Positions 608 through 64,000 of a DNA stretch of 64,000 nucleotides are shown here, piece by piece. The notes beneath the pieces are model-generated. The model had not been told where the DNA came from and made no database searches. It saw nothing but the letters and a program-made list of their open reading frames with translations. The stretch covers positions 682,877 to 746,876 of the forward strand of contig NW_024055676.1 of assembly GCF_902713615.1 (NCBI RefSeq). Direction: 5' to 3'. Positions within the stretch are counted from its first letter, which is position 1, and every line of letters begins with the position of its first letter. This DNA is from Scyliorhinus canicula. Taxonomy: Eukaryota. A program made the position numbers and the translations under genes.

Positions 608-1122
608 ATGTTTCTGTTAATACTGGCGACGTTATTGGACGGTAAGTAATGAATAAAGTTCATAAAGCCAGATTATCAGGTTATAGATTGTAATAACATT
701 TAACATAATTAACGACCAGAAATATCCACATGATGAGTGGTGTTGAGTTTTCACAAACTGACACACATACAAACAAATTTAGATGAATTATATTTCAACT
801 ATTGATGTTTCATTTATCTCCCTTTGCAGGCGGACTAAGCGCAGATCCAGTAACTCAGTCACCGGTGACAAAAACCGTGTCAGAAGGGGGTTCGGTGCGG
901 CTGGATTGTGAATATACAGACTCCAGTATGCGGTACATGCAATGGTATCAGCAGAAAGCGGCACAGCCACCAATTTGGCTTATTACCAATGTATTAGCTC
1001 TGAAGAAAGATGAAGTTTCAGTACGATATCTGGCGGCTGCTGACAAGTCTAAACAGAACGGTTACCTCAATATCAGCGGCCTCAGTGTGGATGACGGGGC
1101 GGTCTATTACTGTGCAATGAGG
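608..1122 (+). CDS. TRAV/DV: TCR alpha/delta-type V segment, intact (family A, copy 1)
   Basis: Leader exon 608-641 (MFLLILATLLD-G), GTAAGT donor, CAG acceptor at 829. V exon 830-1122 reads DPVTQSP...LDCEY...WYQQK...YYCAMR with Cys23, Trp41 and Cys104. RSS: CACAGCG 1123-1129, 23-nt spacer, ACAAAAACC 1153-1161. Confidence 0.93.
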
Positions 1123-2027
1123 CACAGCGTTCGAAAGCCGCTAGTCTCCAGTACAAAAACCTCAGCGGGTATGTACAGCTCCATTAAATCTGTTTTTCTG
1201 CTCCTGTCTGCGGGAATTGTTTGATCCTGGATTCACTAACACAGGTCGGTGTATCTATCATACAGTTATATTGGTGTCTCTGCTCTTCTGCGGGTGAACA
1301 GTGGAGCGATTTGGGAAATCACGAGGCTCATCTCCATGGCGCGATGTACATGGTAAATTAAAACGTGGAAAGCCAGCGTATCAGCAGAGGCAATGAAAGC
1401 TTCCAGATGTGGAGATATGTAGCCGGAAATTATAGTTTGCTCATCTGGAATGGTTAACTCAGATGAACCCAAAGCCGCTGAGTCTGTCCCGCACGTTCCT
1501 GCAACAAAATAGAGAGTGTGTCAAACTCTCCTGTTGTATTTCACATATGGAATTCAGAGTAAGAATTTCAACAAGGACGCACGGAGCAACATGATTATTA
1601 TTACCATACAGGACCATGGTGTCTGCTATAGGCTTCAGTAGAAAATCGATTTTTCGATCGAAAACTCATCTCTTGCCTGCTGCTGGGGAGTTACTTAGGT
1701 CGGCATGTACTTCTGAGGGGTGCGGCTCACGGTGAGACCTATAAAACTGAGGGGCTTGGGTGAATCCACAAGTCATGATTGCCCGGGAGCACCACAGCCT
1801 TGTACTTGTATCGCCCTTACAGCTTTTTTCTGCTCTGCCATGAAGGCCAATATTACTGGCAATGATTTCACCCAAGTGTCTCTGGCAATCAGAGGATTAG
1901 CCGTCTCTGCTGAAATGAGCAGAGCCTGTTCTGATCGTCAGTACTGCGCACCTGCTGCTACATTGAGTTATCTACACTATTATAGATCCTTCCTCCTCCT
2001 ACAGTCAGACAGCTCAACTGTGCTGTG

Positions 2028-3960: not shown

Positions 3961-4453
3961 ATGTTTCTAATAATACTGGCGGCGCTGTCGCACGGTAAGT
4001 ACCGGATAATAAGTATTGAGGCAGATACACATACACATCGATGGCAATGTCATTACCACCGAAAATATCTATATGAAGTGCAATTTGGCCGCTTCACAAA
4101 CTCTCTCAGATATAGGCAAATTTACATCAGCTCTTGATAGTTAATCCTCTGTCTCCACAGGCGGACTGTGCGCAGATCCAGTAACTCAGTTACCGGTGAC
4201 AATAACCGCATCGGAAGGGGATTCGGCGCAATTTTATTGTGAATATACAGACAAGAATATGTACGACATGCAATGGTACCAGCAGAAACCGACACAACAA
4301 CCGAGATGGATCATCACCAACACTCTAGCATTGAAGAAAGTTGCGTTTTCAGGACGATATCTGGCGGTTGCTGACAAATCTAAACAGAACGGTTACCTCA
4401 ATATAAGCACCCTCAGTGTGGAGGACGGGGCGGTCTATTACTGTGCAATGAGG
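3961..4453 (+). CDS. TRAV/DV: TCR alpha/delta-type V segment, intact (family A, copy 2)
   Basis: Leader 3961-3994 (MFLIILAALSH-G) with GTAAGT donor. V exon 4161-4453 reads DPVTQLP...FYCEY...WYQQK...YYCAMR. RSS: CACAGCG 4454-4460, 23-nt spacer, ACAAAAACC 4484-4492. Confidence 0.93.
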
Positions 4454-5339
4454 CACAGCGTTAGAGAGCAGCTAGAGCACCGTACAAAAACCTCAGCGAG
4501 CATGTATAGCTTCACTAAGTTTCCTTCTGCGCGAAGAATTTGATTTCCGCTTTTCAAACGCTGTCAGGTGTATTTAGCAGGCCGTTCTTTTGGTGCTTCC
4601 ACCCTTGTGCCGATAAACAATAGAGTAGTTTGGAGAATGTTGTGGCTTATCATGCTGAGATATTTACAATAACCTTAATCCCGGAATATCCACCAAGCAT
4701 CATGGGACGATCTCAGATGTGGAGTTAGTATAGGCGGAATGTACGGACTGTTCTTCCAGAAGCCTTAACTCAGCTGAGCCCAGGGCAACCGACTCCTCGG
4801 CACCCGGTGAGTAATTAAATGCAGAATAGAGCAGAGGGAGGTGGTGGCAAAGTGGCATTGTCACTAAACAAGAAATCCAGAGACCCAGAGTAATTCTCTG
4901 GGGTTGACGCATAACTGCCCCCTCAAGACCGATTGGCAATGAATCAAAAGAACAAACAATTCCTGCGCTACTTACACATGAAATGTAGAACATCAGAGAC
5001 TCATCTAACAACACTGCCAGCAATATCAGTCCGTGAGATGGGGAGCACACGATGCCGGGTTTAGGTTTGAATAAAAATCGATCAAATACAAGTAAATCAT
5101 TACTTGAATCTGAAAAACTGGACAATTTCAGCAGGTCTGGTAGCATCTGTGGAGAGAGAAGGGAGCTAACGTTTCGAATTTCGGTGGCTCTTTGTCAATA
5201 CGGATGTTGAGTTGATTATGGGTTTACCGAAATACAGACCAAACCACAAACGAGTCCCAGAAATCTAAATTGCAGCTGTTTAAACACTGCCTTCCTTATT
5301 GTTAATGTTTATGTCTGAAAATGATGAGTGGCGTTGATT

Positions 5340-6393: not shown

Positions 6394-6606
6394 ATGTTCT
6401 GAATGCGAGTTGCAATCGGAAACTGGTATAACTGTGCAGGTGGGCCTCACTACTGATGCTTTTTAGTGTTGTGTGTTGTTACAATTTGTGTCACTGTCAC
6501 TATGGAAACTGAACTATCGATGAGGGCGCACCCCCTGCTGAGCCGTGGGTGGAACTGCCAGTGTGGGGTTTTTGTACGGGTTCCACCATATCTCTGCAGC
6601 AGTGTG

Positions 6607-7111
6607 GGCTCCATGGCACAGAAATAAACGGCGCTGTCGGAGATCATTGTGCTACTGATTGTCAGCTCGGTAGTCTTGTTCCTTTTATCAAACGTAGAAG
6701 AAAACCGATGGCTGAGTTCGGTGTTCCTTTGCACAGTTAGCCCAATAACTCGAAGCATGTAGCTTATAGCTTTCCCGGGCTGCTGACTGTACCAGTACAC
6801 AAAAGGGTTAGGAGAACTTGTTTTCAAGGTGCAGGTTAATGTGACTTCACTTTCCTCTGTAACCGTTATTTCCGATTCCTTTTGTTCCACGGTGTCTTGC
6901 TGGCTCCATTCTAACAGAAGTAACAGCGATAATGACAATCAGAGTCAGCTTCATATTAAACAATAAAATCATCAACAACATAATCTCTGTCATTTTACCA
7001 ACAATAACATTTGGGTTACAGCAGTCAGGAAGACAATGGAGCGTTACTGGGAAGGAAATACTTACTTAGAAGTGAGATGACAATGAGGAGCGAAGCGAGA
7101 TGGTTCCTCAT
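6607..7111 (-). CDS. TRAV/DV: TCR alpha/delta-type V segment, intact (family B)
   Basis: Leader 7111-7066 (MRNHLASLLIVISLL-K) with GTAAGT donor. V exon 6910-6607 reads WSQQDTVEQ...LTCTL...WYSQQPG...YFCAMEP. RSS: CACACTG (6606-6600), 24-nt spacer, ACAAAAACC (6575-6567). Confidence 0.9.
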
Positions 7112-9247: not shown

Positions 9248-9669
9248 ATGTTTTTAATATTACTGGCGGGGCTCTTGCACATTAAGTAATGGATTTTCCT
9301 CATCAATACAGTTTAACAGATTGATGGGAATTTACACAAATTCATACAGTTAATGAAGGTTTACCTCCATCCTGTTTATCCTTCTGCTCTTTTGAGCCTC
9401 TACATTTACAGGCGGACTATTTGCGGATCCAGTGACAGTCTCCGGTGACAGTAGCTGTGTTTGAAGGTGCCTTGGTGACGTTAGATTGAGAATATACAAC
9501 CCGGGTAATAACGGGCATCCACTGGTATGGACAGAGACCGGCACAGTCTCCAAACTGGATTATTAATGAAGTAATAGGACTGTAAACAGATGGAATCTGA
9601 GGGCAATATCTGGCTGTTGCTCATAATATAAACACGCTGAGTGTGGAGGTCTCTTACTGTGCATTGAGG
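9248..9669 (+). pseudogene. TCR V pseudogene (family A, copy 3)
   Basis: Leader MFLILLAGLLH with the donor mutated to TTAAGT. V exon from 9412 has a 2-nt deletion in FR1, Cys23 TGT>TGA, further stops and an FR3 deletion. RSS: CGCAGCT, 23 nt, ACAAAAATC (9670-9708). The promoter aligns with 360-607. Confidence 0.88.
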
Positions 9670-10411
9670 CGCAGCTTCACATAATAACCAAGAACTCGCA
9701 CAAAAATCCTCTGCGAGTCTTTGTGTAGTCTTCTTAGCGCCTTGATCAACCGGGATAATTTCATCCCAGGCCCACGGACAACAAACATTAGCAGGTTTGT
9801 TTATCAAACAGTTGCATTATTTTATTGGTCCTTGTTCAAATCAATCGATCTGAGAAATGTTGCGACGTAGCTCAATATCGCCGCCGAAACCTCCTCAATA
9901 AATATCTCGCAGCTTATACAGAATACTGACCTGCCGACATCGGCAGAGAAAGCTCTCGCACGTGGAGTGATTACAGCTGAACATTACTCACTGTCTTTCC
10001 ACAGCCTTCAATTCGGCCGGATGCTGGGAGACTCATTGTGCATCACACATTCCTGTAACAAAACGTAAAATGTGTCTAAGTAAGGAATTTGATTTAACAC
10101 AAGAAATAGACAACGACCTTTGAATATTAACTCACCGAACGGCACAATGATTATTATCTTAAAGCACCATCGAACCCGTGCTCTCTGGTTGTGACTTCTA
10201 CAGAACATAAACTGAATTTAAATGGATTCTGGACCTTCTTTTCTGATATTAAACAGGAAATTCAAATCACGAACAGGCCTCACTCATTGGGACGTATCCA
10301 CGGAAGAATGTTACTAAAATGCCTGCTCTCTGATGACTGCACAGGCGACACACTTTCTGAATCACCACGGCAGGTTTTTGTACGGCCCTGAATGGTTTTC
10401 AGTTCACTGTG

Positions 10412-10928
10412 CCTCCACTGCACCAAGATAGGTGGCGGTATCTGCCAGTCGAACGTCACTAATATTCAGAACGCTTTGTTTCTCTGAAAAACTGAGCCGA
10501 GCTGTGATCCTCCCCTGATCGCTGGTACCGCTCGCCAGATGCTGCATGGTTCCATCCGGGTATTGTCTGTACCATTGTATGATCTTTCCTGCTAATGTGG
10601 TGGAACAGGCCAAGGATGCAATGTTTCCCTTGGTAACAACCACTGACTCAGGAGACTGTGATATCTCGTCACTGCCAGCGGCATCTGAGAAAAATGTAGA
10701 TGTAAAATAACATGATAAATTTAATATCGCACAGACCACGAGAATATACTATAGCAAAATCAAATACAAAATGACATAACAAAATACACAATAAAGCAAA
10801 CTATATGTTACTACAACATGACATATCTGATGTGTGACATATTCCTGCCAGATATAGTGATCACACTCACACGGAGAGAAGAGTAAGACATTCAGGGAGA
10901 TAATCACTAAAGTGAAACTCAGCTTCAT
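10412..10928 (-). CDS. TRAV/DV: TCR alpha-like V segment, open frame but Cys104>Gly
   Basis: Leader 10928-10871 (MKLSFTLVIISLNVLLFSP-Y) with GTGAGT donor. V exon 10684-10412 reads DEISQSP...LACST...WYRQYP...DTATYLGAVE. Consensus RSS: CACAGTG (10411-10405), 23 nt, ACAAAAACC (10381-10373). Confidence 0.85.
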
Positions 10929-11156
10929 GTTGGATCCTATCGATCTGTGTTAAGTAGCTCTCGGTAGTTTTCAGGACCAGAGACAATGCTGCGAAGGCAG
11001 CGTTGTTGTATATCAAACTGAGTCCAACATCAACTGCACCGTGCCCGCCCGAACCAGGTCTCTGGGGCTTGTGATCACAAAGTGAAGCTGTGAAGGAGCT
11101 TCAGCATTGGTGGGGTGTGGGTAGGAGAATGCGCACGCGGCAGAGCACCGTCACTG

Positions 11157-11231
11157 TGACGTCTGACTGAGGACACGTGTGACGTTTCCCTGCATATTTA
11201 GTGACGTAGGTCTGTAAACTGAGTGACGTCA
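11157..11231. promoter_or_regulatory. Cluster of four CRE-type TGACGT sites plus a CACGTG E-box
   Basis: TGACGT at 11157, 11180, 11202 and 11224. The last lies within AGTGACGTCA, which matches the TCR V promoter decamer. The cluster is 230-300 bp upstream of the ATG at 10928. Confidence 0.6.
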
Positions 11232-11279
11232 GTGGGACTGGTTGAAGGGGCAGAAACATCGTTGCCGGAGCTGATCTGA

Positions 11280-11418
11280 ACATCCAGCCCTGTGTTTCTG
11301 AGAACTAACCGCTGATCAGATTTTTCGATTCAGTCCAACATTCGGACAAGTTGCACCCATTGACCATCTCGGAGCTGCGGCTGTCTGACACCGCGGTCTA
11401 TTACTGTGCACAGAGTGT
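11280..11418 (+). pseudogene. 5'-truncated TCR V relic (FR2 part to FR3)
   Basis: Reads PLTISELRLSDTAVYYCAQS, then RSS CGCAGTG 11419-11425, 23 nt, GCAAAAACT 11449-11457. No leader or FR1 found. Confidence 0.8.
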
Positions 11419-12364
11419 CGCAGTGATGGGAGCGAGTGAAAGTCTCGAGCAAAAACTGCCGCAAGTTTCTGGGTCACAGCTGCTGTCTGTTGAAGAGTTT
11501 TTAAACAGCAGATCGGCTACTGACAAGTTAATAGATTCTCGTGCACATAAACTACAGCACAATCCATAGCAACACCGCCTAAAATGGTTCGCATTGAATA
11601 GTGATTCAGTCTGATTGTTGCATTAACTGTGAGAGGGAGGAACTTGCTGCTGTTCATTTCGAGTCTCGGAGAACTCGCTACTACCATTGCGAGCACTGCC
11701 ACCCGTGGGTGGCCTGGAACTATATACATCCGTGCACCTCTGATGAGGAAAAGAAACTCCGAGTGAGAGCAAAGACTTTTCTGTTTGTGACATCAGGCTG
11801 TAATGTAAACCGAATCCAGCATGGTGAGGAGACTCCTAATCAATAGAATAGGCCGATAAAATTCCTCTCAATGTTAAATACACTAACGAATATTAAAACT
11901 AAGAATGAACAGTCACATGAACAGTTATAAATGGGTATTTTCAGGACATGATTAGAAGCCAATGAAAATAATATAGTAAACTGTGAGGTCAGGCGTTGTA
12001 CGTTTTCGGTCGCGGAATGGTCACCGAATGGTCGGAAAAACGAGTTAATGGAAGAATAACCAGAACATTTTCTTCACTGCATGTTCTGCAGCTTTGGATT
12101 TGGATTTTAGTGTCACAAGTGCCGAGGTAGAATGAAAAATATTGTTTTGCGTACAGTCCAGTCAGATCGTTGCATTAATGAAAAACAGGATATACGATAG
12201 ATACACAATATAAATCTATAGGCACAGACATCGGGTGAGCATACGCAGTGTAGTATAATAATAATATTAATAATCTTTATGAGTGTCACAAGTAGGTTTA
12301 CATTAACAATGCAATGGAGTTACTGTGAAAATCCCCATGTCGCCCCACAAAGACAGTTCAGTTC

Positions 12365-13328
12365 ATAATGTGTCCAATGTGTCCAAGTTTGCAGATGACA
12401 CTAAGATGAGTGGTAAAGCGAAAAGTGCAGAGGATACTGGAAGTCTGCAGAGGGATTTGGATAGGTTAAGTGAATGGGCTAGGGTCTGGCAGATGGAATA
12501 CAATGTTGACAAATGTGAGGTTATCCATTTTGGTAGGAATAGCAGCAAATGGGATTATTATTTAAACGATAAAACATTAAAGCATGCCGCTGTTCAGAGA
12601 GACTTGGGTGTACTAGTGCATGAGTCACAGAAGGTTGGTTTACAAGTGCAACAGGTGATTAAGAAGGCAAATGGAATTTTGTCCTTCATTGCTAGAGGGA
12701 TGGAGTTTAAGACTAGGGAGGTTATGTTGCAATTGTATAAGGTGTTAGTGCGGCCACACCTGGAGTATTGTGTTCAGTTTTGGTCTCCTTACTTGAGAAA
12801 GGACGTATTGGCGCTGGAGGGTGTGCAGAGGAGATTCACTAGGTTAATCCCAGAGCTGAAGGGGTTGGATTATGAGGAGAGGTTGAGTAGACTGGGACTG
12901 TACTCGTTGGAATTTAGAAGGATGAGGGGGGATGTTATAGAAACATTAAAAATTATGAAGGGAATAGATAGGATAGATGCGGGCAGGTTGTTTCCACTGG
13001 CGGGTGACAGCAGAACTAGGGGACATAGCCTCAAAATAAGGGGAAGTAGATTTAGGACTGAGTTTAGGAGGAACTTCTTCACCCAAAGCGTTGTGAATCT
13101 ATGGAATTCCTTGCCCAGTGAAGCAGTTGAGGCTCCTTCATTACATGTTTTTAAGGTAAAGATAGATAGTTTTTTGAAGAATAAAGGGATTAAGGGTTAT
13201 GGTGTTCGGGCCGGAAAGTGGAGCTGAGTCCACAAAAGATCAGCCATGATCTAATTGAATGGCAGAGCAGGCTCGAGGGGCCAGATGGCCTACTCCTGCT
13301 CCTAGTTCTTATGTTCTTATGTTCTTAT
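12365..13328 (+). mobile_element. CR1 LINE, 5'-truncated, young
   Basis: Open ORF to 13227 includes SKFADDTK and the CR1 C-terminus (...KGYGVRAGKWS). The 3' tail is a TTCTTATG tandem repeat. Confidence 0.92.
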
Positions 13329-13736
13329 AAGAGGGTCATTCAGAAGTCTGGTAATAGCGGGGAAGAATCTGTTTTTGAATCCAGCTTGTATGCCTGCTAT
13401 TGCGGCTGCATTTACTTGTTGTGTTACTTCCTGTAACCGCTAAATCACATCGTTAAGTATTGTTTTCAACATTTCTTTCGCGACATTGTTCAATTACAAA
13501 ATGGTACAAATGCTCCAAACATTTCTTTTCATTCTGTCTAGAATGTATTTAATGTGAATGGAATGGAACAGAACTTTCCCAATGCAGCACTATTACTTTC
13601 GGCTTTATACTTATTTCAATATTTTCAAATGAGAACAATCTGCAGGTTTATCTCCCAATCTGTACCCAGTTCCATTCACAGTGTCACACTGCGACAGTGA
13701 TTTTGTGCCAGACTCCCTCTGGTTGCTGTCACTGTC

Positions 13737-14077
13737 TCTCAGTCCGCAGTACTACACCGCGCTGTCAGACAGCAACAGTTCCCGGATGTTGAAATTTCCC
13801 TCACTCCTCGAACTGTTCAAAGATGCAGAAAATCGACTCCCCACGCCCACTGCTCTGGAAACACCTCCGTAATTAGGAATGTAGATCAAGAATATGGGGG
13901 CTTCGTCCCGGTCCTGACGGTACAATTGCAAATAATATGTACCAGCTGTGGTCGAATAGCTGAAATCAATAGTAATCAGGATCTGCAGTGGACGATTTGC
14001 CCCTTCACATGGGGGTGCTCTGCAATTGTACAGATCATAGTTGTTCGACCTGGAATCTAATTTCCTGCACCACCTGC
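13737..14077 (-). pseudogene. TCR V pseudogene (delta/alpha-type)
   Basis: Minus frame reads ...DFSYSTTAGTYYLQLYRQDRDEAPIFLIY...RFSASLNSSRSEGNFNIRELLLSDSAV*YCGLR, with Cys23>Phe, Trp41>Leu and a TAG. RSS: GACAGTG (13736-13730), 23 nt, ACAAAATCA (13706-13698). The 5' limit is approximate. Confidence 0.85.
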
Positions 14078-14488
14078 ATGTCCCTTATTTCCCCGCATAT
14101 CCCCAAATCCAACATATGTCTCGAAACAACTAAACGACGAACAACCGTCGCTCTCTGTGACACAGAGAGGGCGTGAAAGCGAATGTTAGTCCTGTTCCTG
14201 AGCGTATCTTTGAGACAGGGCACAGATGGATGCTATTTAGTGTTGTCATGACGGTGGCATTTGGAGAGCTGCTCGCAAAGCACAGAAACTACTATAAAAA
14301 GGGATTTAGCAGACAATGATACACGTTCAGCACTACAGAAAGAAATAATTAGGGCTAGCTGCTCTTTATAATATTGCTTTGTTTACATAAATAGTTCACA
14401 ATCCAGGTGAAAGATCTAATTCAGTGAATCGAGGTGAGAGTGCTTTACCGGTTTTTGTACGGGTTGAGAGTCCCTCTGTAACAGTGTG

Positions 14489-14925
14489 GGGCTCAGCGCA
14501 CAGAGATACACGGCAGAGTCAGAGACACGGACCCCGGTGATATTTAAAGGAATCGTTTTCTTATCCTTGTCTAAATCAGCAGAAAACCGGTCAGGGAAAT
14601 CTGAAGACCTTTCTCCCTTCCCCGCGCTATATTTCTTCAGTAGATATCTCGGAGCTTCCCCTGGATACTGGATGGACCAGAAGAGATTCTGGTCAGTATA
14701 TTTTGCTTTGTAACTGCAGTTCAATATTGCTGCTGTCCTTCCTGAACCGGTAATTCAGGCGGCTCCTGGGAAACCGAATCTTGGCCACTGGTTCCTGTAA
14801 CAACATATAGAATGTGTCATAAATATGTGAGTAAATATAACCTATGAAACACAGGAGGAGGATTTGAGCTCAGACTCACCGGGCAGCAAGACCGTTATTA
14901 TCAGTAAAACACACAGGGAGCACAT
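14489..14925 (-). pseudogene. TCR V segment with a single-base frameshift in FR1
   Basis: Leader 14925-14880 (MCSLCVLLIITVLLP-G) with GTGAGT donor. The exon from 14794 reads GTSGQDSVSQEPPELPVQEGQQQY*, and a shifted frame continues LNCSYK...FWSIQYPG...YLCALSP. RSS: CACACTG (14488-14482), 23 nt, ACAAAAACC (14458-14450). Confidence 0.87.
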
Positions 14926-15152: not shown

Positions 15153-15848
15153 CACATTCCACCCCTGGCTGTGTGTTTGTCTTTCTCGCTCCCTTCCTCA
15201 CATTGCCGTCATTCTGACACTTTCTCGGTTGAAATCGTTTTCCTTCGACATCAACTTTCACATCTTTCCTGAGGTAGATATTTCTCCCCAAAAATGTGAA
15301 AGATAAAATAAATATTTTAAAATCAGCCTTACACACAGATGTTAACGAGGCCATTCAGTGCACGAACATAATTAATAATTACTGTTTTAAAGGTACCCGG
15401 GATAAATAGTCATCCAACTCTACGCCAAGATGCGCTTCCACTGGGGTCTCTTGTACTGGTAAAGTACTCATTTCAGTCAGTCATCACTTGTACCCCAGGA
15501 AATTTAAATGTGATAACTCTGAATTTGATCACTTTTTAAAAGTGCTGCATGGTAGATTGCCACCTGATCAAGAAGTTTCACAAATACAGATTGATGAAAT
15601 GATTCTCCGGGATCGGCAGGTTTATATAAATGGGATCGGGAAATTATGGAATTTGATTCTGGGGTATAATGACCGTCAAATGTCAAATGGCCCAACAGTG
15701 AGAACCATTGACCTCATTCAGGGAAACCCATTCAGATGGAGCTGGATTGCCCCGTTTATTATCTGTACCAATGCAACTCCTTGTGCTTACTTGATACGGA
15801 AATCGTGCCAGTTTGTGTATGAGCCCCGCCGGGCCCTCGTTCACTGTG

Positions 15849-16320
15849 GGTCTCAGCGCGCAATAATACACGGCGCTGTCTGTCATCTTCAAATCTGTCA
15901 GGGACAAGTGAAAAGTGCTTTGTGTCGGGTGGAGTTTCCCGCTGAAACGTTTAAAGCCGGGAGCCGTCTCGTTGAACCCATAACTATCGGCTCTGAGTAG
16001 ATATCGCGGAGCTCGGTGTGGATACTGGCGATACCAGAAGTGGTAATAGCTTGCAGCTGAACTCGATACCGAGTAACTGCAGGGTATGGCTGAATCTTCA
16101 CCCTCTTCTGCGTCGACTCGTTGTTCTTCCTGAGACACCGAGTCTCCCTTACTCATCCCTAAAATGAAAAAGCTGGTTAGAAGGAGAAACGTGAAGCGGA
16201 TGAGCACCCGAAGATGGAAATAAGAACACATTTGGGAATTGGAGGATTCAGTACAGAGGTTCAATATAACCAACCTGTCATCAGGACAATAACCAGAGGC
16301 AGGTAGAGTATCAGCCCCAT
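15849..16320 (-). CDS. TRAV/DV: TCR alpha/delta-type V segment, intact
   Basis: Leader 16320-16275 (MGLILYLPLVIVLMT-G) with a GT donor. V exon 16158-15849 reads DSVSQEE...IPCSYS...WYRQYPH...YYCALRP. RSS: CACAGTG (15848-15842), 23 nt, ACACAAACT (15818-15810). Confidence 0.92.
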
Positions 16321-29142: not shown

Positions 29143-29838
29143 GGGTTGGGGGTTGCGAGGTCGGCTGTAAGGTATTAGTGCTGGATTTTGCTGTTGCTGT
29201 GTTCTCTTTTTCTTCTGTTGTTTTCTTCTTGTTTTAGTACTTTTGCAATTTTGATATGGTTATTTACGGAGGGGTCGTTCTGCTATGTTTTTGTTTTTGT
29301 GCTGTGGGACATTGTCTGGGCTGTGTATCTTGAGGGGAGGGTCGGGGGGATATGTTGTATTCTATGCCGGAGTGGGGGTATGGAGTGGGGCTGATATTTG
29401 GGAGCTGCGTCAGAAGGGTGAGGTGGGGCAGTGCAAAACCGCGGGCTTTCCTCTGGTTTCCCGTGCTGCGGGGCTGGGGGGGTGGAGATGGTGATGGGGG
29501 AGGCGGGGCCTTAACTGGTTCTTCCCCGCGCTGGAGCGGTGCCAGGAGGAGGGATAGATTGGGGGATGATCCCACTTCGGGAGGGGTCGGGCTATTGGCG
29601 GGAGTTTCCGGGGTCAGCAGAAGTTAGCTGACCCACGGAAGTACAATGGAGGACGGTTCGCGGCTGGGAGGGTTCCTAGCCTGGGGGGGAAGGGAGGGGG
29701 GGAAAGGGGATTACCGGGTTGCTGTTGGTAGGGTCAAGAAGGAGCTGGTGGGGGCTGGGGGGACAGAGGTGAGGGGTTGTCGCTATGGGGACGGGGTCGA
29801 GCAGGGGGTGCTGGCTTGGGGCGGGCAGTCAACGGGCT

Positions 29839-32800
29839 ATGGCTAGCCGACGGGGGAGGGGGGGCGGGACGCCCTCTGATCCGGTTGGTCACCTGGAATG
29901 TGAGAGGGTGGAATGGGCCGGTGAAGCGGTCGAGGGTACTGGCTCACCTGAAGGGGCTAAAGGCGGATGTGGTAATGCTTCAGGAGACCCACCTGAGGGT
30001 GGCGGACCAGGTCCGCCTGAGGAAGGGATGGGTGGGGCAGGTTTTCCACTCGGGGTTGGATGTGAGGAACCGGGGAGTGGCGATTCTGGTGGGGAAAAAT
30101 GTGTTGTTTGAGGCATCGGAGGTGGTGGCGGATAAGGGGGGTAGGTATGTGATGGTTAGGGGCAGGCTACAAGGAGAGAAGGTGGTACTGGCTAGTGTGT
30201 ATGCCCCAAATTGGGACGATGCGGGCTTTATGAGGCGTATGTTGGGACGGATCCCGGATCTGGAGGCAGGAGGTCTGATCATAGGGGGGGACTTTAATAC
30301 GGTGTTGGATCCTTCACTGGATCGGTCCAGCTCTAGGACGGGTAGGAGGCCGGTGGCGGCCAAGGTACTGAGAGGGTTTATGGACCAGATGGGTGGGGTG
30401 GATCCATGGAGGTTTGTAAGGCCGAGGGCACGCGAGTACTCTTTCTTCTCCCACGTACATAGGGTCTACTCTCGGATAGATTTCTTCGTGGTGAGTAGGG
30501 GACTGATTCCGAGAGTGGAGGAGGCCGAGTATTCGGCCATTGCAATCTCCGACCACGCTCCGCGTTGGATAGAGTTGGAGATGGGAGAGGTGCGAGACCA
30601 ACGTCCATTGTGGCGGTTGGATGTGGCGTTGTTGGCGGAGGAGGAGGTGTGTAGGAGGGTCCAGGCAAGTATTGAGGGGTACCTTGAGGTGAATGATACG
30701 GGGGAGGTTCAGGTGGGGATGGTCTGGGAAGCCCTGAAGGCAGTAATTCGTGGGGAGCTGATATCCATCCGGGCACACAGGTAGAGGAGCGAGAGGAGTG
30801 AGAGGGATAGACTGGTGGGAAAGATGCTGGAGGTGGACAGGAGGTATGCAGAGGCACCAGAGGAGGGACTGTTGGGGGAGAGGCGCAGCCTGCAGGCTAA
30901 ATTTGATTTGCTGACCACTAGAAAGGCGGAGGCACAGTGGAGGAAGGCACAAGGGGCAGTGTACGAACATGGTGAAAAGGCGAGTAGGATGCTGGCTCAT
31001 CAGCTGCGTAAGCGGGATGCGGCTAAGGAGATTGCTGGAGTGAGAGATAAGAGTGGGAATGTGGTGCGGAAGGGGGTAGAGGTGAATGAGGTCTTCAAGG
31101 ATTTTTACAGGGAACTGTACCGGTCGGAGCCAACGGGGGAGAGGAGGGGAATGGAGAGGTTCCTTGACGGGCTTTCTTTCCCGAAGGTGCAGGAGGAGAA
31201 GGTGGAGGGGTTGGGTGCGCCGATTGAGCTGGAGGAGCTAGTTAAGGGGATCGGGCAGATGCAGTCAGGGAAGGCACCGGGGCCGGATGGGTTCCCGATG
31301 GAATTTTATAAAAAGTTTGTGGATCTAGTGGGCCCCTTGCTGGTGCGAACACTCAATGAAGCGTGGGAGGGGGGGGGACTTTGCCCCCGACGATGTCACG
31401 GGCGCTGATCTCGTTAATTTTAAAGAAGGACAAGGACCCCCAGCAGTGTGATTCATACAGGCCCATATCTCTCCTCAACGTGGACGCTAAGGTGCTGGCA
31501 AAAATCCTGGCCACCAGGCCAGAGGACTGTGTGTCAGTGGTTGTGCACGAGGACCAGACAGGTTTTGTGAAGGGAAGGCAGCTGAACACGAATGTGCGGA
31601 GATTGCTGAATGTCATCATGATGCCGGCGATTGAGGGGGAGGCAGAGATAGTGGTGGCACTGGATGCGGAGAAGGCCTTCGATAGAGTGGAGTGGGGGTA
31701 CCTATGGGAGGTGTTGGGGAGGTTTGGATTTGGTGAAGGGTTCATTAGATGGGTAAGGCTGTTATATGAGGCCCTGATGGCGTGCGTGGCTACGAATAGG
31801 AGGAGGTCGGAGTACTTCCGGCTTTACCGAGGGACCAGGCAGGGTTGCCCCTTGTCCCCCTTGTTGTTTGCACTGGCAATCGAGCCGCTGGCGATGGCAT
31901 TGAGAGATTCAGAGAGGTGGAGAGGCTTGGTGCGAGGTGGAGAGGAACATAGGGTGTCGTTGTATGCCGACGACCTGTTACTGTATGTGGCGGACCCGGT
32001 GGGAGGGATGCAGGGAGTGATGGAGTTACTAGCCGAGTTTGGGACCTTCTCAGGTTATAAATTAAACTTAGGCAAGAGCGAGGTGTTTGTGGTGCACCCT
32101 GGAGACCAGGAGGAAGGGATTGGTAGGCTCCCGCTTAGGCGGGCAGGGGAGAGCTTTAGGTACCTGGGGGTGCAAGTGGCCAGGGACTGGGGGACTCTCC
32201 ACAAGCATAACTTTACCAGGCTGGTAGATCAGATGGAGGAGGAGTTCAGGAGGTGGGACATGCTGCCATTGTCGTTGGCGGGGAGGGTGCAGTCCGTCAA
32301 AATGACAGTGCTTCCAAGGTTCTTGTTCCTTTTTCAGTGCCTGCCCATATTTATCCCCAGGGCCTTCTTTAGGAGAGTGACTAGCAGTATTCTGAGTTTT
32401 GTGTGGGCACATGGGACTCCGAGAGTGAGGAGGGTGTTCCTGGAGCGAGGAAGGGATGGAGGTGGGCTGGCACTGCCCAACCTTCTGGGGTACTATTGGG
32501 CAGCCAATGTGTCAATGGTGCGTAAATGGGTGATGGAGGGGGAGGGGCGGCGTGGAAAAGAATGGAGATGGCGTCATGTAGAGGTACGAGCCTGGGTGCC
32601 ATGGTAACGGCACCGTTGCCGCTCTCCCCTAAGAGGTTTACCACGAGCCCGGTGGTGGCGGCGACCCTAAGAATCTGGGAACAATGGAGACGGCATCGGG
32701 GGGAAACAAGGGGCTCGATGGAGGCTCCACTGGGTGGCAACCATCGGTTCATCCCGGGGAACACGGATGGGGGATTCAGGGGGTGGCAAAGGGCGGGCAT

Positions 32801-33635
32801 CAGCAAATTGAGGGACCTGTTTATTGGCGGGAGGTTTGCGGGCCTGGGGGAACTGGAAGATAAATTTGGCCTTCCCCAGGGGAACATGTTCAGATACCTG
32901 CAGGTAAAGGCGTTTGCTAGGCGACAGGTAGAGGGATTCCCTTTGCTGCCCTCGAAGGGGGCGATGGACAGAGTGCTTTCGGGGGTGTGGGTAGGAGAGG
33001 GGAAGGTGTCTGACATCTATAAGGTAATGCAGGAGGTGGAGGAGTCGTCAGTGGAGGAGTTGAAGGCTAAATGGGAGGAGGAACTCGGGGAGCAGATAGA
33101 GGACGGGACTTGGGCGGATGCCTTGGAGAGAGTCAACTCTTCCTCCTCATGTGCGAGGCTTAGTCTCATCCAATTTAAGGTGCTGCACCGGGCCCACATG
33201 TCCGGGACTAGGATGAGTAGGTTCTTCGGGGCTGAGGACAGGTGCACCAGATGTTCGGGGAGTCCTGCGAACCACGCCCATATGTTCTGGGCATGCCCAG
33301 CACTGAAAGAATTCTGGAAGGGGGTGGCGGGGATGGTGTCGAGGGTGGTTGGATCCAGGGTCAAACCAGGGTGGGGACTCGCGATTTTTGGAGTTGCGGT
33401 AGAGCCGGGAGTGCAGGAGGCGAAAGAGGCCGGTGTCCTGGCCTTTGCGTCCCTAGTAGCCCGTCGAAGGATTCTGTTACAATGGAAGGATGCAAGGCCC
33501 CCAAGTGTGGAGACCTGGATCAGTGACATGGCGGGATTTATAAAATTGGAAAAGGTCAAATTTGCCCTGAGAGGATCAATACAAGGGTTCTATAAACGAT
33601 GGCAGCCTTTTTTGGACTTCCTGGCTCAGAGATAG
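29839..33635 (+). pseudogene. L1 ORF2p (APE endonuclease, reverse transcriptase, C-terminal CCHC), disrupted
   Basis: Contains VTWNVRG, LQETH, GDFN and SDHAP (EN); YRPISLLN, GTRQGCPLSP and YADD (RT); and CTRC...HMFWAC. Broken by TAG at 30782-30784 and by frameshifts in G-runs at about 29860, 31373 and 32545. Confidence 0.92.
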
Positions 33636-34590: not shown

Positions 34591-35027
34591 NNNNNNNNNN
34601 NNNNNNNNNNNNNNNNNNNNNNNNNNNNNNNNNNNNNNNNNNNNNNNNNNNNNNNNNNNNNNNNNNNNNNNNNNNNNNNNNNNNNNNNNNNNNNNNNNNN
34701 NNNNNNNNNNNNNNNNNNNNNNNNNNNNNNNNNNNNNNNNNNNNNNNNNNNNNNNNNNNNNNNNNNNNNNNNNNNNNNNNNNNNNNNNNNNNNNNNNNNN
34801 NNNNNNNNNNNNNNNNNNNNNNNNNNNNNNNNNNNNNNNNNNNNNNNNNNNNNNNNNNNNNNNNNNNNNNNNNNNNNNNNNNNNNNNNNNNNNNNNNNNN
34901 NNNNNNNNNNNNNNNNNNNNNNNNNNNNNNNNNNNNNNNNNNNNNNNNNNNNNNNNNNNNNNNNNNNNNNNNNNNNNNNNNNNNNNNNNNNNNNNNNNNN
35001 NNNNNNNNNNNNNNNNNNNNNNNNNNN
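34591..35027. other. Assembly gap (437 N)
   Basis: Run of N characters. Confidence 1.
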
Positions 35028-43100: not shown

Positions 43101-43182
43101 GACGAGGTGGCCGAGTGGTTAAGGCGATGGACTGCTAATTCATTGTGCTATGCATGCGTGGGTTCGAATTCCACCCTCGTCG
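43101..43182 (+). tRNA. tRNA-Ser(GCT): tRNA-Ser(GCT), 82 nt, probably a retroposed copy
   Basis: Acceptor stem GACGAGG/CCTCGTC, D arm, anticodon loop CTGCTAA (GCT at 43134-43136), long variable arm and T loop TTCGAAT, followed by TTTTT. It differs from the vertebrate consensus I recall at about 4 positions, three of which give G-U pairs. Confidence 0.92.
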
Positions 43183-61000: not shown

Positions 61001-63460
61001 TCTGGGGATGGAATTCACCCAGAACAGCTTCAGCCACCGAATGTATTAGACTGACACAAATTATAACGGACCTGCTTTAATTTGTGAAACCATCAAGTGC
61101 AGAATTGAGAATGTAGAACAGTACCTTTCAGGACCATCTAGCCATCCATCCATCAATCCCATTCACTAATTTCACAATCAAAATATTCACGCATCAAACC
61201 AACATCCATCACTACATCAAAGCAGTAACCCATTATCTTTTGGGTGAATGTTGGGGGCGTATTAATGTCATTGAACCAATAATCCAAAGGCCTGGGCTAA
61301 TTCTGTGGGGATTTGGGTACACATCCTCCCGTAGTCTGTGGGGGGATTTGAGTTCAATTAATAAATCGAAAAAACATACTACTGGCCACCATGAACTCCC
61401 CTCTGCTTCGCCAATGAAATAAATCTGACATCCTTCCCTGGTCTCACCTACATTTGGCTCCAATCGGATAGCAACATGTCTGACTTCTGAGCTGGCCCAG
61501 CTCAAGAGCAATTAGGGATAGGGGATACCCGGTGGTCTTGACAGTGAGTCCCAAATTCCACGGAAGAATAAAAGGAAAAACACATAAATCTACATGTTAA
61601 TCTATTACAAAATGTACCCTCTGTCTGATACTCTGTCTGATAGTCTGGTTGCATGTCTACCCATCATCACAATGTTATGAGATGTGGGAGAGATCCGTCA
61701 GCCGGCTATGTTGCTAAGAGTGGCAAGAGAAGCTGGATAACTCTCCTTAGAGATGGGAACAATTCAAATAGGTTCACAATTTAAAACGTAAAATGATCTC
61801 CAGTACTGTTGCTGGGTAGATTTGTTTATAAATAGTCCTCATTGACAATGTTACGAGTTTGAAGTTGGCTTGCAGCCAAGCGGTCAGTACTGAGCAAACA
61901 GATCTCTGAAAAACAAATCCAGATGTTTCCTGTAAACAACATTGAACATTCGAGCCTCCCTGACTGCAGGCGGCTGGATTGCTGCCAAATACTGTGTGGG
62001 GCAGATTAGCCTGAATATGAATGGATTAAATGGGATTTATCCATTCAAACAATAAATGTTTAGTCGCACATGAAGTAAACGTTTTAAATGGTGTTCCAGG
62101 CAAATAAATATACTCACTGAATGTTTTGTTCACTATGAGATTAAACACAATCTGAAAATAGTAACCTGACCAGATGCTATTTAATTTAAATTAGTTCTGA
62201 GTAAAGGTCACTCTAGTTATTAAAGTCCGTTTGTTAAAAACCTAATGAAGTGGGAGTGAGTGGTGTTGGTGGACCCAATCCACAAGTTCAATAAGATGAC
62301 TCCAATTACAAAAAATAAAATAAAATTAATTAAAAGTTTTAAAATACTGCATTGAATTCGCGGGGAATCCTGGAATATTCTCCGAGTTGTCGATCTCCGT
62401 TAAACGGAGGCGTCTCTTATACCCGATTAGCACCGTGTTCTGTACAGTTTAATTTGTCTGGATTTCCATTATTTAACAGTCCCTCTCATTGCTGCTAATG
62501 AGTGGAGAAATGACCAGTTCATGACCAGCTTCAGTGGAAGATAAAACATTTATTCCTGTGATATTGTGTAATATGCCACAAAGTCCTGATATCCTGTGTT
62601 CCCAACACCAGTGAATGTTAGACAGCCGGTGGTCAGTAAAATTAACGGCAATGGTTTGGATGCTGAAGGATAACTTTGCTGATCACCGTGTCCGTTCTGA
62701 TTCATTAACTTCTCTGTCAAAAGTTGGTGTGCATTTTATGTTTCTCTGTCAACTCACTGTTGAATTATCAGGCAAGCGGCTTCTTTTACCGCTAATGTTC
62801 ACAGGACTGTCTGAGGCTGAGGGACAGTTCGAGAAATGTAAAGAGAGACTTTTTGTAATTTGAGAGTTTCTTCTTGTCTACAGACCCACATTGTACAGTG
62901 ATGGCTATCCGCACTGCAAATGTAATCACGTCATTCATTCCCTCATTTAGTTACATTATGTCTGATAAATTATACTTTATTGTTGCAATGGGATAGAGTC
63001 CCGGAGTGTTGCAAATCTGAGTGACAAACGATTTATTCCCTGATAGTGTAATTTAATCTGTTTATGTTCATCCCTTTATATTGGAGTGCAGAAATAAAGA
63101 GACTTAATATATAATGGAATTCGATTTTACTTAGAGATGTTTAAATATCATTTCCCATTCAGATGAGGATAGACATTACAATGAATCCATTCAGCCAAAC
63201 AAATATACCGATACCGATCTAATATCGTTTTTTAAATAATAACCTATTTAAATATCTGTGTCCATTCTGTTGGGGGTGTGGAAGGCGGGACGTGGATCCA
63301 GTCGCCGCCTCCACCAGGGAATCAACAGGCGGCGCCTGGAAAGCCGCCCCCTTCTGCCGGGTATTTAAATGCCGCTCACTGGGACCCGAATCCAACAGTC
63401 CGGGAGTTGGTTTGTTCACTGAGTTCCTGACACAACCATTTCCCCCAAATGACCAGAAGG

Positions 63461-63939
63461 ATGAGGTGGGCCATTTCTCTCAGTTTGTTGCTGACTTTCT
63501 TATCCCGTGAGTAGTTTTTATTGTCCAAGTCTCTCACTGTTACTGTCTCAGTGTTAGTCTCTCTCTGGAATGTTCCAGAGTCACCAATCATTTCACCAGC
63601 ATTAATCCTCGGGCTTTTTGATATATTTTTACAGGTGTCCAGTCGGATGTTGCATTAACTCAGCCGGAGGCAGAGACCGGGCGTCCCGGAGGCTCCCTGA
63701 CACTGACCTGTAAAACCAGCGGCTTCAATCTTGGCAGCTACTGGATGGGTTGGATCCGCCAGGTTCCCGGACAGGGGCTGGAGTGGCTGGTGAGCTACCA
63801 TTCTTCATCCAGCAACAGCTACGCCCCAGCAATTAAAGATCGATTTACTGCGTCCAAAGACACTTCGAACAACATCTTCTCTTTGGCCATGACGAACCTG
63901 AAGACCGAAGACACCGCCATCTATTACTGTGCAAGAGAC
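63461..63939 (+). CDS. IGHV: Immunoglobulin heavy-chain V segment, IgM class, intact
   Basis: Leader 63461-63506 ([16 protein letters not shown]) with GTGAGT donor and CAG acceptor at 63634. The V exon encodes [101 protein letters not shown], typical of shark IgM VH. RSS: CACAGCG 63940-63946, 23 nt, ACAAGAACA 63970-63978. Confidence 0.95.
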
Positions 63940-64000
63940 CACAGCGAGAGGAACCAGGGCTGGACCCGCACAAGAACAGCTCGAGAGGGAATTCAGCAAC

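What the first reader, a model, noticed from the sequence alone, without database searches (positions are those of the whole stretch)
63461..63978. Intact IgM-class VH with a 23-RSS on the same scaffold as a TCR alpha/delta V array
Seen: an apparently functional shark IgM VH lies about 47 kb from the last intact TCR V, in the same orientation as the family A V genes and with the same 23-spacer RSS type. Established: nurse shark makes IgHV-TCRdelta chimeric chains and has Ig-like V segments in its TCR alpha/delta locus, and VHdelta genes occur in Xenopus, platypus and some birds. Inference: this VH may join TCRdelta D/J in cis, giving antibody-type antigen binding on T cells. It could instead be the first exon of an ordinary IgM V-D-D-J-C cluster next to the TCR locus. 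The window ends 22 nt after the nonamer and the linkage crosses a 437-N gap, so I cannot decide between these.
Basis: partly seen in the sequence, partly recalled or inferred. Interest (0 to 1): 0.8.

Follow-up and report, generated by a model that had tools for sequence, protein, structure and literature searches.

The report
Ordinary shark IgM VH beside TCR-type V genes
This is an intact, transcribed shark antibody heavy-chain V gene that most likely opens an ordinary IgM gene cluster lying among T-cell-receptor-type V genes, an arrangement already published for sharks.

Summary
An intact IgM-type VH gene sits at 63461-63978: split leader, 128-nt intron, V exon ending YYCARD, and a 23-spacer RSS. 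It lies 47 kb from the last intact TCR alpha/delta-type V, across a 437-N gap.

The headline idea, a VH built to join TCR delta in cis, is not the best reading.
- Promoter, leader, intron, V exon, RSS spacer and 3' flank align over 815 nt (77%) with a bamboo-shark VH. That VH is followed by D1, D2, JH and C-domain exons.
- The protein is 81% identical to a classical horn-shark IgM VH.
- RNA contigs show a cap site, strong exon coverage and a 50-250-fold drop exactly at the RSS. The junction tails carry the IgM D1 core and one JH-type DYWG.
- Unverified notes on the next window place an Ig J-C intron about 10 kb and Cmu1 about 13.8 kb downstream.

Flajnik et al. 2025 (PMC12227049) already report IgM clusters interspersed with TCR alpha/delta-type V exons in catshark. 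This scan noted the same motif on at least 15 other pieces of this genome.

I could not read the downstream DNA, test the gap, or look for C-delta-linked transcripts. Occasional use with TCR delta, as in nurse shark, stays possible. Verdict: already known, low interest.

The parts
63362..63369 (+). TATA-like box TATTTAAA of the VH promoter
   Evidence: Read directly from the sequence. It lies 31 nt upstream of the mapped 5' end of a cDNA contig. The promoter region from 63176 on is conserved with the bamboo shark VH promoter.
63393..63460 (+). 5' untranslated region, with the transcript start at about 63377-63393
   Evidence: An X1 contig begins at 63393, preceded by 22 non-genomic letters (GAGTGGCCATTACGGCC...). 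From memory these match a SMART template-switch cDNA adaptor. The X16 contig starts at 63377. There is no RNA depth upstream in those runs.
63461..63506 (+). Leader exon (signal peptide part 1, [15 protein letters not shown] + 1 nt)
   Evidence: Translation and donor GTGAGT at 63507. It is homologous to the L001 leader [16 protein letters not shown].
63507..63634 (+). Leader intron, 128 nt, GT...AG
   Evidence: Sequence. RNA contig depth in the intron is about 42, against 420-1000 in the leader-exon bins and up to about 2800 in the V exon (X1). For X16 the figures are 43 against 21500-119000. The intron aligns with the L001 intron.
63635..63939 (+). V exon: end of the leader (R)VQS plus the VH region DVALTQ...YYCARD, open and intact
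   Evidence: Translation. Best database hits are horn shark Ig heavy chain V region HV01 at 81% (E 5e-48) and a Scyliorhinus torazame V-set protein at 82%. PDB matches are antibody VH domains.
63940..63978 (+). 23-spacer recombination signal: heptamer CACAGCG, 23-nt spacer, nonamer ACAAGAACA
   Evidence: The spacer is 19/23 identical to the RSS spacer of the bamboo-shark IgM-cluster VH. RNA depth falls 50-250-fold across this boundary.
832..1160 (+). Context: intact TCR alpha/delta-type V exon (family A, ...YYCAMR) with a 23-RSS
   Evidence: The nearest atlas clusters are TVA / TCR alpha-delta variable. The best PDB stretches are VL-like.
4163..4491 (+). Context: second intact family-A TCR-type V exon with a 23-RSS
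   Evidence: It is 73% identical to the first family-A V.
6569..6908 (-). Context: intact TCR-type V exon (...VYFCAME) with an RSS (24-nt spacer, nonamer ACAAAAACC)
15810..16156 (-). Context: intact TCR alpha-like V exon (...YYCALR) with a 23-RSS. This is the last intact TCR-type V before the VH.
   Evidence: The best single-domain PDB matches are TCR alpha chains. The nearest atlas cluster is TCR alpha/delta variable.
9436..14754 (.). Context: five defective V elements. 9436-9669 (+) has stops. 10412-10680 (-) has a perfect RSS but Cys104 changed to Gly. 11318-11413 (+) is a fragment. 13737-13976 (-) has a stop. 14489-14754 (-) has a frameshift or stop in FR1.
34591..35027 (.). Context: 437-N gap between the TCR-type V genes and the VH. 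It lies about 1-2 kb downstream of the open reading frames of a LINE copy.
   Evidence: for the gap. for the endonuclease ORF at 29777-30784 and the reverse transcriptase ORF at 31363-32607. A further ORF at 32526-33635 has no family match.

Best explanation
The VH at 63461-63978 is the V element of a conventional shark IgM minicluster (VH-D1-D2-JH-Cmu). The rest of the cluster lies just beyond the end of the window. The cluster sits in the elasmobranch antigen-receptor complex, where IgH clusters are interspersed with TCR alpha/delta-type V exons.

How it works:
- Shown: a TATA-type promoter drives transcripts from about 63393.
- Shown: the leader is split by a 128-nt intron.
- Inferred from cluster geometry in related loci and the literature: in B-lineage cells RAG joins the VH 23-RSS to the D1 element of the same cluster, and then to D2 and JH. 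The VDJ exon is spliced to Cmu about 14 kb downstream, giving an IgM heavy chain.
- Shown for V ends like this one, but not uniquely for this copy: junctions contain the IgM D1 core, and one consensus ends in a JH-type DYWG.
- Not tested: occasional long-range joining of the same 23-RSS to a TCR delta D, as in nurse shark. This would be a side reaction, not the reason the gene is here.
For: 1. Identity. The protein is 81% identical to horn shark IgM VH HV01_HETFR and 80-84% to catshark and bamboo shark VH.

2. Whole-unit homology. window:63176-63985 aligns at 76.6% over 815 nt (E 1e-164) with L001:9722-10529. The alignment covers promoter, leader, intron, V exon, RSS and post-nonamer flank, and the RSS spacer is 19/23 identical. 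In L001 that VH is followed by D1 at 10912-10925 with a 3' 22-RSS, then D2, then JH (YLDYWGQGTMVTVTS) at about 11505-11556, and then a gene whose product carries three C1-set domains. L002 (whale shark) aligns from the promoter to the V end. L003 (bamboo shark) aligns likewise and also has a JH and a C1-set gene downstream.

3. RNA.
- There is a cDNA 5' adaptor junction at 63393.
- Exon depth far exceeds intron depth.
- Depth falls from 2617 to 55 (X1) and from 90012 to 357 (X16) across the V/RSS boundary.
- Loose ends at 63932-63939 contain ACTACAGTGG or ACTACAGCAGTGGG, the D1 core of L001. One consensus ends in GACTACTGGGGA (DYWG).
- Nurse shark Ig-TCR chimeras use TCR D-J-C, not Ig D (PMC5931798).

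4. Within shark clusters VH and D1 are 250-500 bp apart (PMC5192425). Only 61 nt follow the V exon here, so the absence of D and J in the window is expected.

5. Unverified first-stage notes on the next window place an Ig J-C intron 10.2 kb and Cmu1 about 13.8 kb beyond the window end. L001 likewise has a J-C intron longer than 9 kb.

6. PMC12227049 reports, for catshark among others, IgH miniclusters linked to TCR alpha/delta with TCR alpha/delta-type V exons between the IgH clusters.
Against: - The D, J and C segments of this particular copy were not seen by me. The window ends 22 nt after the nonamer, and no tool could fetch the next bases.
- The notes on the next window are unchecked AI readings.
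- The RNA contigs are short k-mer contigs that near-identical paralogous VH genes can share. All three RNA runs carry C instead of T at 63407, so the expressed copy may be an allele or a twin cluster.
- Only one loose-end consensus reaches the WG of the J, and its agreement is 0.58.
- No run could be assigned to spleen or thymus, and nothing was tested against C-delta.
Confidence: 0.86

Rival explanations
1. A VH-delta or TAILV-like segment. On this reading the VH is a dedicated member of the TCR alpha/delta V repertoire. It joins D-delta/J-delta in cis and is expressed on gamma-delta T cells, with no Ig D-J-C of its own.
For: - It is on the same scaffold as TCR-type V genes and in the same orientation as two of them.
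- It shares their 23-RSS type and even their heptamer CACAGCG.
- VH genes inside TCR delta loci and TAILV segments exist in sharks and other vertebrates (PMC12227049).
Against: - The sequence is a classical IgM-group VH and not an intermediate V.
- The non-coding parts of the gene are homologous to VH genes heading V-D-D-J-C clusters.
- Junction tails carry the Ig D1 core, and one consensus ends in DYWG.
- Notes place Cmu1 about 13.8 kb downstream.
- A 23-RSS is the normal RSS of shark IgM VH as well (L001), so it does not discriminate.
- The flanking TCR-type V group is small, mixed in orientation and half defective. According to an unverified note it has another IgM cluster on its other side.
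Confidence: 0.05
2. Dual use. The VH belongs to an IgM cluster, but in thymocytes it is also joined to TCR delta D-J-C at appreciable frequency, by long-range cis or trans rearrangement. This would give IgHV-TCR delta chains as in nurse shark.
For: [quoted passage not shown]
- Flajnik et al. argue that the close linkage makes such joins easy.
- The 23-RSS is compatible with a 12-RSS 5' of D-delta (established 12/23 rule).
- Low-level germline transcripts read through the RSS of exactly this copy with 0 mismatches, which shows an open locus in some cells.
Against: - Nothing here shows a C-delta-linked read.
- The distance and orientation to D-delta/J-delta are unknown.
- The junction tails seen are of Ig type.
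- It has not been shown for catshark in the papers I could read.
Confidence: 0.3
3. Scaffolding artefact. The 437-N gap joins two unlinked pieces, so the VH and the TCR-type V genes are not really neighbours.
For: - The gap lies about 1-2 kb downstream of the reading frames of a LINE copy, in repeat-rich DNA. That is a typical place for misjoins.
- I could not test contiguity.
Against: - The same juxtaposition is noted on at least 15 other pieces of this genome, and on the other side of this same V array (unverified).
- It is published for chromosome-level assemblies of four elasmobranchs.
- Even if this join were wrong, the general linkage would stand.
Confidence: 0.07

Closest known systems
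Shark IgM heavy-chain minicluster VH (e.g. Heterodontus francisci HV01; Chiloscyllium punctatum cluster in L001)
   Same: It has a split leader, a roughly 130-nt leader intron, a VH of the same family (80-81% aa), YYCARD at the end, and a 23-RSS with a conserved spacer. The promoter region is conserved, and expression is high with D1-containing junctions.
   Different: The D1, D2, JH and Cmu parts of this copy lie outside the window and were not read. The heptamer is CACAGCG rather than CACAGTG, and the nonamer ACAAGAACA matches the consensus at 7/9 positions.
Elasmobranch antigen-receptor complex: IgM/IgW/IgNAR clusters linked to TCR alpha/delta with TCR-type V exons between IgH clusters (Flajnik et al. 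2025, PMC12227049)
   Same: A small group of TCR alpha/delta-type V exons lies tens of kb from an IgM-type VH on one scaffold. Catshark is one of the four species in that paper. Some V genes look intermediate between TCR and Ig: family A hits VL-like domains in PDB but TRAV-like clusters in the atlas.
   Different: There is no difference in kind. I could not match the window to the paper's coordinate table, because the supplement is not held.
VH-delta / TAILV (VH-like segments inside TCR alpha/delta loci of nurse shark, Xenopus, platypus, birds)
   Same: It is a VH-type V with a 23-RSS near TCR-type V genes.
   Different: Those segments have no Ig D-J-C of their own and are found on C-delta transcripts. 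This one is a classical IgM VH with cluster-type flanks and Ig-type junctions, and by unverified notes it has a Cmu downstream.
Ig-TCR delta trans-rearrangement chimeras of nurse shark (Criscitiello et al. 2010, as cited in PMC5931798 and PMC12227049)
   Same: [quoted passage not shown]
   Different: No chimeric transcript was sought or seen here. The junctions observed contain Ig D1, whereas the chimeras use TCR D-J-C.

Membership tests
Shark IgM minicluster VH | Split leader, short leader intron, and an open V exon with the conserved Cys/Trp/Cys and YYCAR | tested here: met
   leader 63461-63506, intron 128 nt, V exon 63635-63939 without stops.
Shark IgM minicluster VH | Sequence groups with known IgM VH | tested here: met
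   81% to horn shark HV01 (E 5e-48), and 80% to the bamboo-shark VH P0003. That VH heads the cluster in L001.
Shark IgM minicluster VH | 23-spacer RSS directly 3' of the V exon | tested here: met
   The same type and a conserved spacer are present in L001.
Shark IgM minicluster VH | D1, D2 and JH within about 2 kb downstream (VH-D1 250-500 bp apart, PMC5192425) | not testable with these tools
   The window ends 61 nt after the V exon. The homologous loci L001 and L003 have these elements.
Shark IgM minicluster VH | Cmu exons downstream on the same strand | not testable with these tools
   Only unverified first-stage notes place Cmu1 about 13.8 kb beyond the window end. There is no C1-set-like exon inside the window.
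Shark IgM minicluster VH | Expressed as a rearranged V-D-D-J joined to an Ig J | tested here: inconclusive
   high exon depth, a sharp drop at the RSS, and loose ends with the IgM D1 core and one DYWG tail. The contigs are short and can come from near-identical paralogues, and no Cmu sequence was reached.
VH-delta / TAILV | Lies in the TCR alpha/delta translocon with no Ig D-J-C of its own | not testable with these tools
   The downstream DNA is not readable. The notes and the cluster-type homology of the flanks argue against it.
VH-delta / TAILV | Found spliced to C-delta in T-cell transcripts | not tested
   The single read-laying run could only show 30-nt tails. The tissues of the runs are coded and no C-delta sequence was available.
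VH-delta / TAILV | V sequence distinct from or intermediate to the Ig-cluster VH families (TAILV) | tested here: not met
   81% identity to a classical IgM VH across about 200+ My of shark divergence (the divergence time is from memory). No TAILV reference sequence was available for a direct tree.
IgH / TCR alpha-delta antigen-receptor complex (PMC12227049) | IgH minicluster elements and TCR alpha/delta-type V exons on one contiguous stretch | tested here: inconclusive
   Both kinds of V are in the window. However, a 437-N gap lies between them and its contiguity was not tested.

The most novel reading that the evidence does not exclude
In catshark thymocytes this IgM-cluster VH, and its many sister clusters that each sit beside TCR-type V genes, is used at appreciable frequency with TCR delta D-J-C by long-range rearrangement on the same chromosome. 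On this reading the interspersed IgM clusters and TCR-type V groups form one shared recombination domain, and are more than a relic of common origin.
Probability: 0.25. Interest if true: 0.4.

Novelty: already known. Interest (0 to 1): 0.15.

Why it matters
This finding adds one more example to a published picture. In sharks, antibody heavy-chain clusters and TCR alpha/delta-type V genes share one chromosomal complex. That arrangement is used to explain Ig-TCR delta chimeras and the common origin of the two receptor families.

The open question is whether catshark, like nurse shark, actually uses such cluster VH genes on TCR delta chains. That needs repertoire data, not more genome reading.

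Tried and rejected
**Fetching the DNA beyond the window end**
- An exact-product look-up of the V exon found nothing.

**RNA evidence**
- Read laying reported no joints, so the leader-to-V splice is supported only by depth and consensus splice sites.
- The raw-read run X21 (oligo-dT, single-end) gave one read only.

**Classifying the TCR-type V genes**
- Homologue searches returned only two unnamed or distant hits each.
- PDB searches are dominated by multi-domain scFv chains.
- Classification therefore rests on TCR alpha single-domain hits for one V, atlas neighbours, CAMR/CALR/CAME ends, and the RSS type.

**Literature**
- The primary papers Deiss 2019 and Criscitiello 2010 are not held.
- The supplement with catshark coordinates is not held.
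- No TAILV reference was available, so no tree was built.

**Scans inside the window**
- Scans for D1 cores, J-like (W/F)GxG plus donor, and C1-set-like exons were all empty.

**Ideas considered and rejected**
- The shared CACAGCG heptamer of the VH and the family-A V genes does not mean a shared partner, because a 23-RSS is standard for both gene kinds.
- Shared orientation is not an argument for cis joining, because the V array is mixed in orientation.

Full report
**1. What is in the sequence**

- The ATG is at 63461.
- The leader exon is 46 nt (63461-63506, [15 protein letters not shown] plus one base), with donor GTGAGT.
- The intron is 128 nt and ends in AG at 63634.
- The V exon runs 63635-63939 and reads (R)[101 protein letters not shown] without a stop.
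- The RSS follows directly: heptamer CACAGCG (63940-46), a 23-nt spacer, and nonamer ACAAGAACA (63970-78).
- The window ends 22 nt later.

A strict 23-RSS pattern occurs 4 times in the window against 0.01 expected. All four hits abut V exons. The N gap is at 34591-35027, 437 N.

**2. Surroundings**

The first 16 kb hold nine V elements.
- Four are intact: 832-1122 (+), 4163-4453 (+), 6609-6908 (-) and 15851-16156 (-). They end in CAMR, CAMR, CAME and CALR, and each has a 23/24-spacer RSS.
- Five are defective. Three have stops or a frameshift, one is a fragment, and one (10412-10680, -) has a perfect RSS but Gly in place of the second Cys.

The CALR gene's best single-domain PDB matches are TCR alpha chains. 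The nearest atlas clusters for two of the genes are TRAV or TCR alpha/delta variable (leads only). The two family-A genes match VL-like domains best in PDB. This fits the published remark that some V genes in this region are intermediate between TCR and Ig.

Between 16 kb and 63 kb I found only repeats.
- A LINE copy has an endonuclease ORF at 29777-30784 and a reverse transcriptase ORF at 31363-32607. A further unclassified ORF runs to 33635, about 1 kb before the gap.
- A second reverse transcriptase fragment lies at 47.9-48.5 kb.
- There are SINE copies and one tRNA-Ser gene.

No D1-like core, no J-like (W/F)GxG segment with a donor, and no C1-set-like exon occurs anywhere in the window.

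**3. What kind of VH it is**

The closest proteins among 5.8 billion are horn shark 'Ig heavy chain V region' HV01 (81%, E 5e-48), Scyliorhinus torazame V-set proteins (82-84%) and Chiloscyllium punctatum V-set proteins.

The bamboo-shark hit P0003 could be fetched with its flanks as L001. In L001 the VH ends in the same YYCARD plus 23-RSS. It is followed by these elements:
- D1 (ATACTACAGTGGGT, 10912-10925) with a 3' 22-spacer RSS;
- a D2 region;
- a 23-RSS JH encoding YLDYWGQGTMVTVTS at about 11505-11556;
- a gene model whose product carries three C1-set domains.

No C exon lies within 9 kb of the J.

window:63176-63985 aligns with L001:9722-10529 at 76.6% over 815 nt, E 1e-164. The alignment covers about 285 nt of promoter, the leader, the intron, the V exon, the RSS and the bases after the nonamer. 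The RSS spacer is 19/23 identical. A whale shark VH (L002) and a second bamboo-shark cluster VH (L003, with JH and a C1-set gene downstream) align over the same unit.

So the whole gene unit, and not only the coding V domain, is of the IgM-cluster kind.

**4. Expression (one call allowed)**

Contigs of three runs of the same species label were laid on 62800-64000 at 96% identity or more.
- There is no depth upstream of about 63377 in X1 and X16.
- One X1 contig starts at 63393, preceded by GAGTGGCCATTACGGCC.... From memory these letters match a SMART template-switch adaptor, which would mark a cDNA 5' end 31 nt downstream of TATTTAAA (63362-69).
- Exon bins reach 420-2800 (X1) and 21500-119000 (X16). 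The intron sits at 42-43.
- Across the V/RSS boundary, depth falls from 2617 to 55 (X1) and from 90012 to 357 (X16).
- The few contigs that read through the RSS match this copy with 0 differences. This fits sterile germline transcripts, which are known for shark Ig loci (PMC5192425), or carried-over DNA.
- Loose ends at 63932-63939 read ...ACTACAGCAGTGGG..., ...TACAGCAGTGGCTGGGTAC... and ...ACTACAGTGG.... These contain the D1 core seen in L001.
- One consensus ends in GACTACTGGGGA (DYWG), the start of a JH. Three others end in CATGGGCT and are cut at 30 letters.
- One X2 contig is a V joined to ATACTACAGTGGGT followed by an intact CACAGTG heptamer. That is a V-D1 join that keeps the D1 3' RSS. 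It comes from a 97%-identical paralogue.

Nurse shark Ig-TCR chimeras use TCR D-J-C (PMC5931798), so junctions with Ig D1 point to rearrangement within a cluster.

Caveats:
- The contigs are short and can be shared by near-identical VH copies.
- Contig depth is a poor measure of expression.
- All runs show C for T at 63407.
- The tissues are coded.

**5. Downstream of the window**

I could not read it. First-stage notes on the next window are unverified. They describe a palindrome 'inside the Ig J-C intron' 10.2 kb beyond my window end. They also describe two repeat arrays '1.3 kb' and '0.5 kb upstream of Cmu1' at 11.7 and 12.8 kb beyond it. Both arrays place Cmu1 about 13.8 kb past the end.

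That spacing agrees with the J-C intron of more than 9 kb in L001. It also agrees with the cluster geometry in the literature: VH-D1 250-500 bp apart, and V, two D and J within about 2 kb (PMC5192425).

Another note places a further IgM cluster about 41 kb on the other side of the same V array. Similar IgM-cluster-beside-TCR-V notes exist for at least 15 other pieces of this genome. Follow-up agents there call the species a catshark.

**6. Comparison with what is known**

Flajnik et al. [quoted passage not shown] Their findings bear directly on this window.
- Each V(D)JC cluster stays together.
- Other V domains are intermediate in sequence.
- The authors use this linkage to explain the nurse shark VH-to-TCR-delta transrearrangements and TAILV.

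The present window is an instance of that arrangement.

**7. Verdict**

The best explanation (0.86) is an ordinary, active IgM-cluster VH at the edge of the window, inside the known IgH/TCR alpha-delta complex.

A dedicated VH-delta or TAILV role is unlikely (0.05). The V is a classical IgM VH with cluster-type flanks and Ig-type junctions. The 23-RSS and the orientation do not discriminate between the two readings.

Occasional additional use with TCR delta remains open (about 0.25-0.3) but was not testable. A misjoin at the gap cannot be excluded (0.07), and it would not change the general picture.

Novelty: already known. Interest: low.

Noticed in passing
window 63863-63932 (X2 contig): A 303-nt RNA-run contig joins a 97%-identical VH end to ATACTACAGTGGGT, followed by an intact CACAGTG heptamer and the same post-heptamer bases as the bamboo-shark D1 3' RSS. 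This is a V-D1 join that keeps the D1 3' RSS. It is either a germline-joined VD cluster or a transcribed partial rearrangement of a paralogous cluster.
   Followed up: partly
window 63407: All three RNA-type runs carry C where the window has T, at 100% of depth in the 5' UTR contig. The expressed copy is therefore an allele or a near-identical twin cluster.
   Followed up: no
window 832-1122 and 4163-4453 (+): The family-A TCR-type V genes (WYQQK..., ending YYCAMR, 23-RSS) match VL-like domains best in PDB, but TRAV-like clusters in the atlas. They have only two word-level homologues among 5.8 billion proteins. This is a poorly represented family that looks intermediate between TCR and Ig.
   Followed up: partly
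window 10374-10680 (-): This V exon has a perfect consensus 23-RSS (CACAGTG / ACAAAAACC), but the second canonical Cys is replaced by Gly (...DTATYLGAVE). The RSS is preserved on a V that probably cannot fold normally.
   Followed up: no
window 29777-33635 (+), upstream of the N gap at 34591: A LINE copy has an open endonuclease ORF (29777-30784) and reverse transcriptase ORF (31363-32607). A further unclassified ORF runs to 33635, about 1 kb before the 437-N gap, so the gap sits in repeat-rich DNA.
   Followed up: partly
window 43101-43182 (+): The only tRNA in the window is a tRNA-Ser(GCT) gene.
   Followed up: no
L001 18713-19012 (+): The bamboo-shark IgM J-C intron holds a tandem array of about 69-nt units that stays open in one frame (YRVNGRALGSDVEHRALRFKLI... 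repeated). This may bear on other notes of this scan, which say switch-like arrays are missing from bamboo-shark IgM genes.
   Followed up: no
window 62689-62789 vs L001 9047-9149: A 100-nt patch about 700 nt upstream of the VH start codon is 74% conserved between this locus and the bamboo-shark cluster, at a matching distance. It could be an upstream regulatory element or a shared repeat.
   Followed up: no
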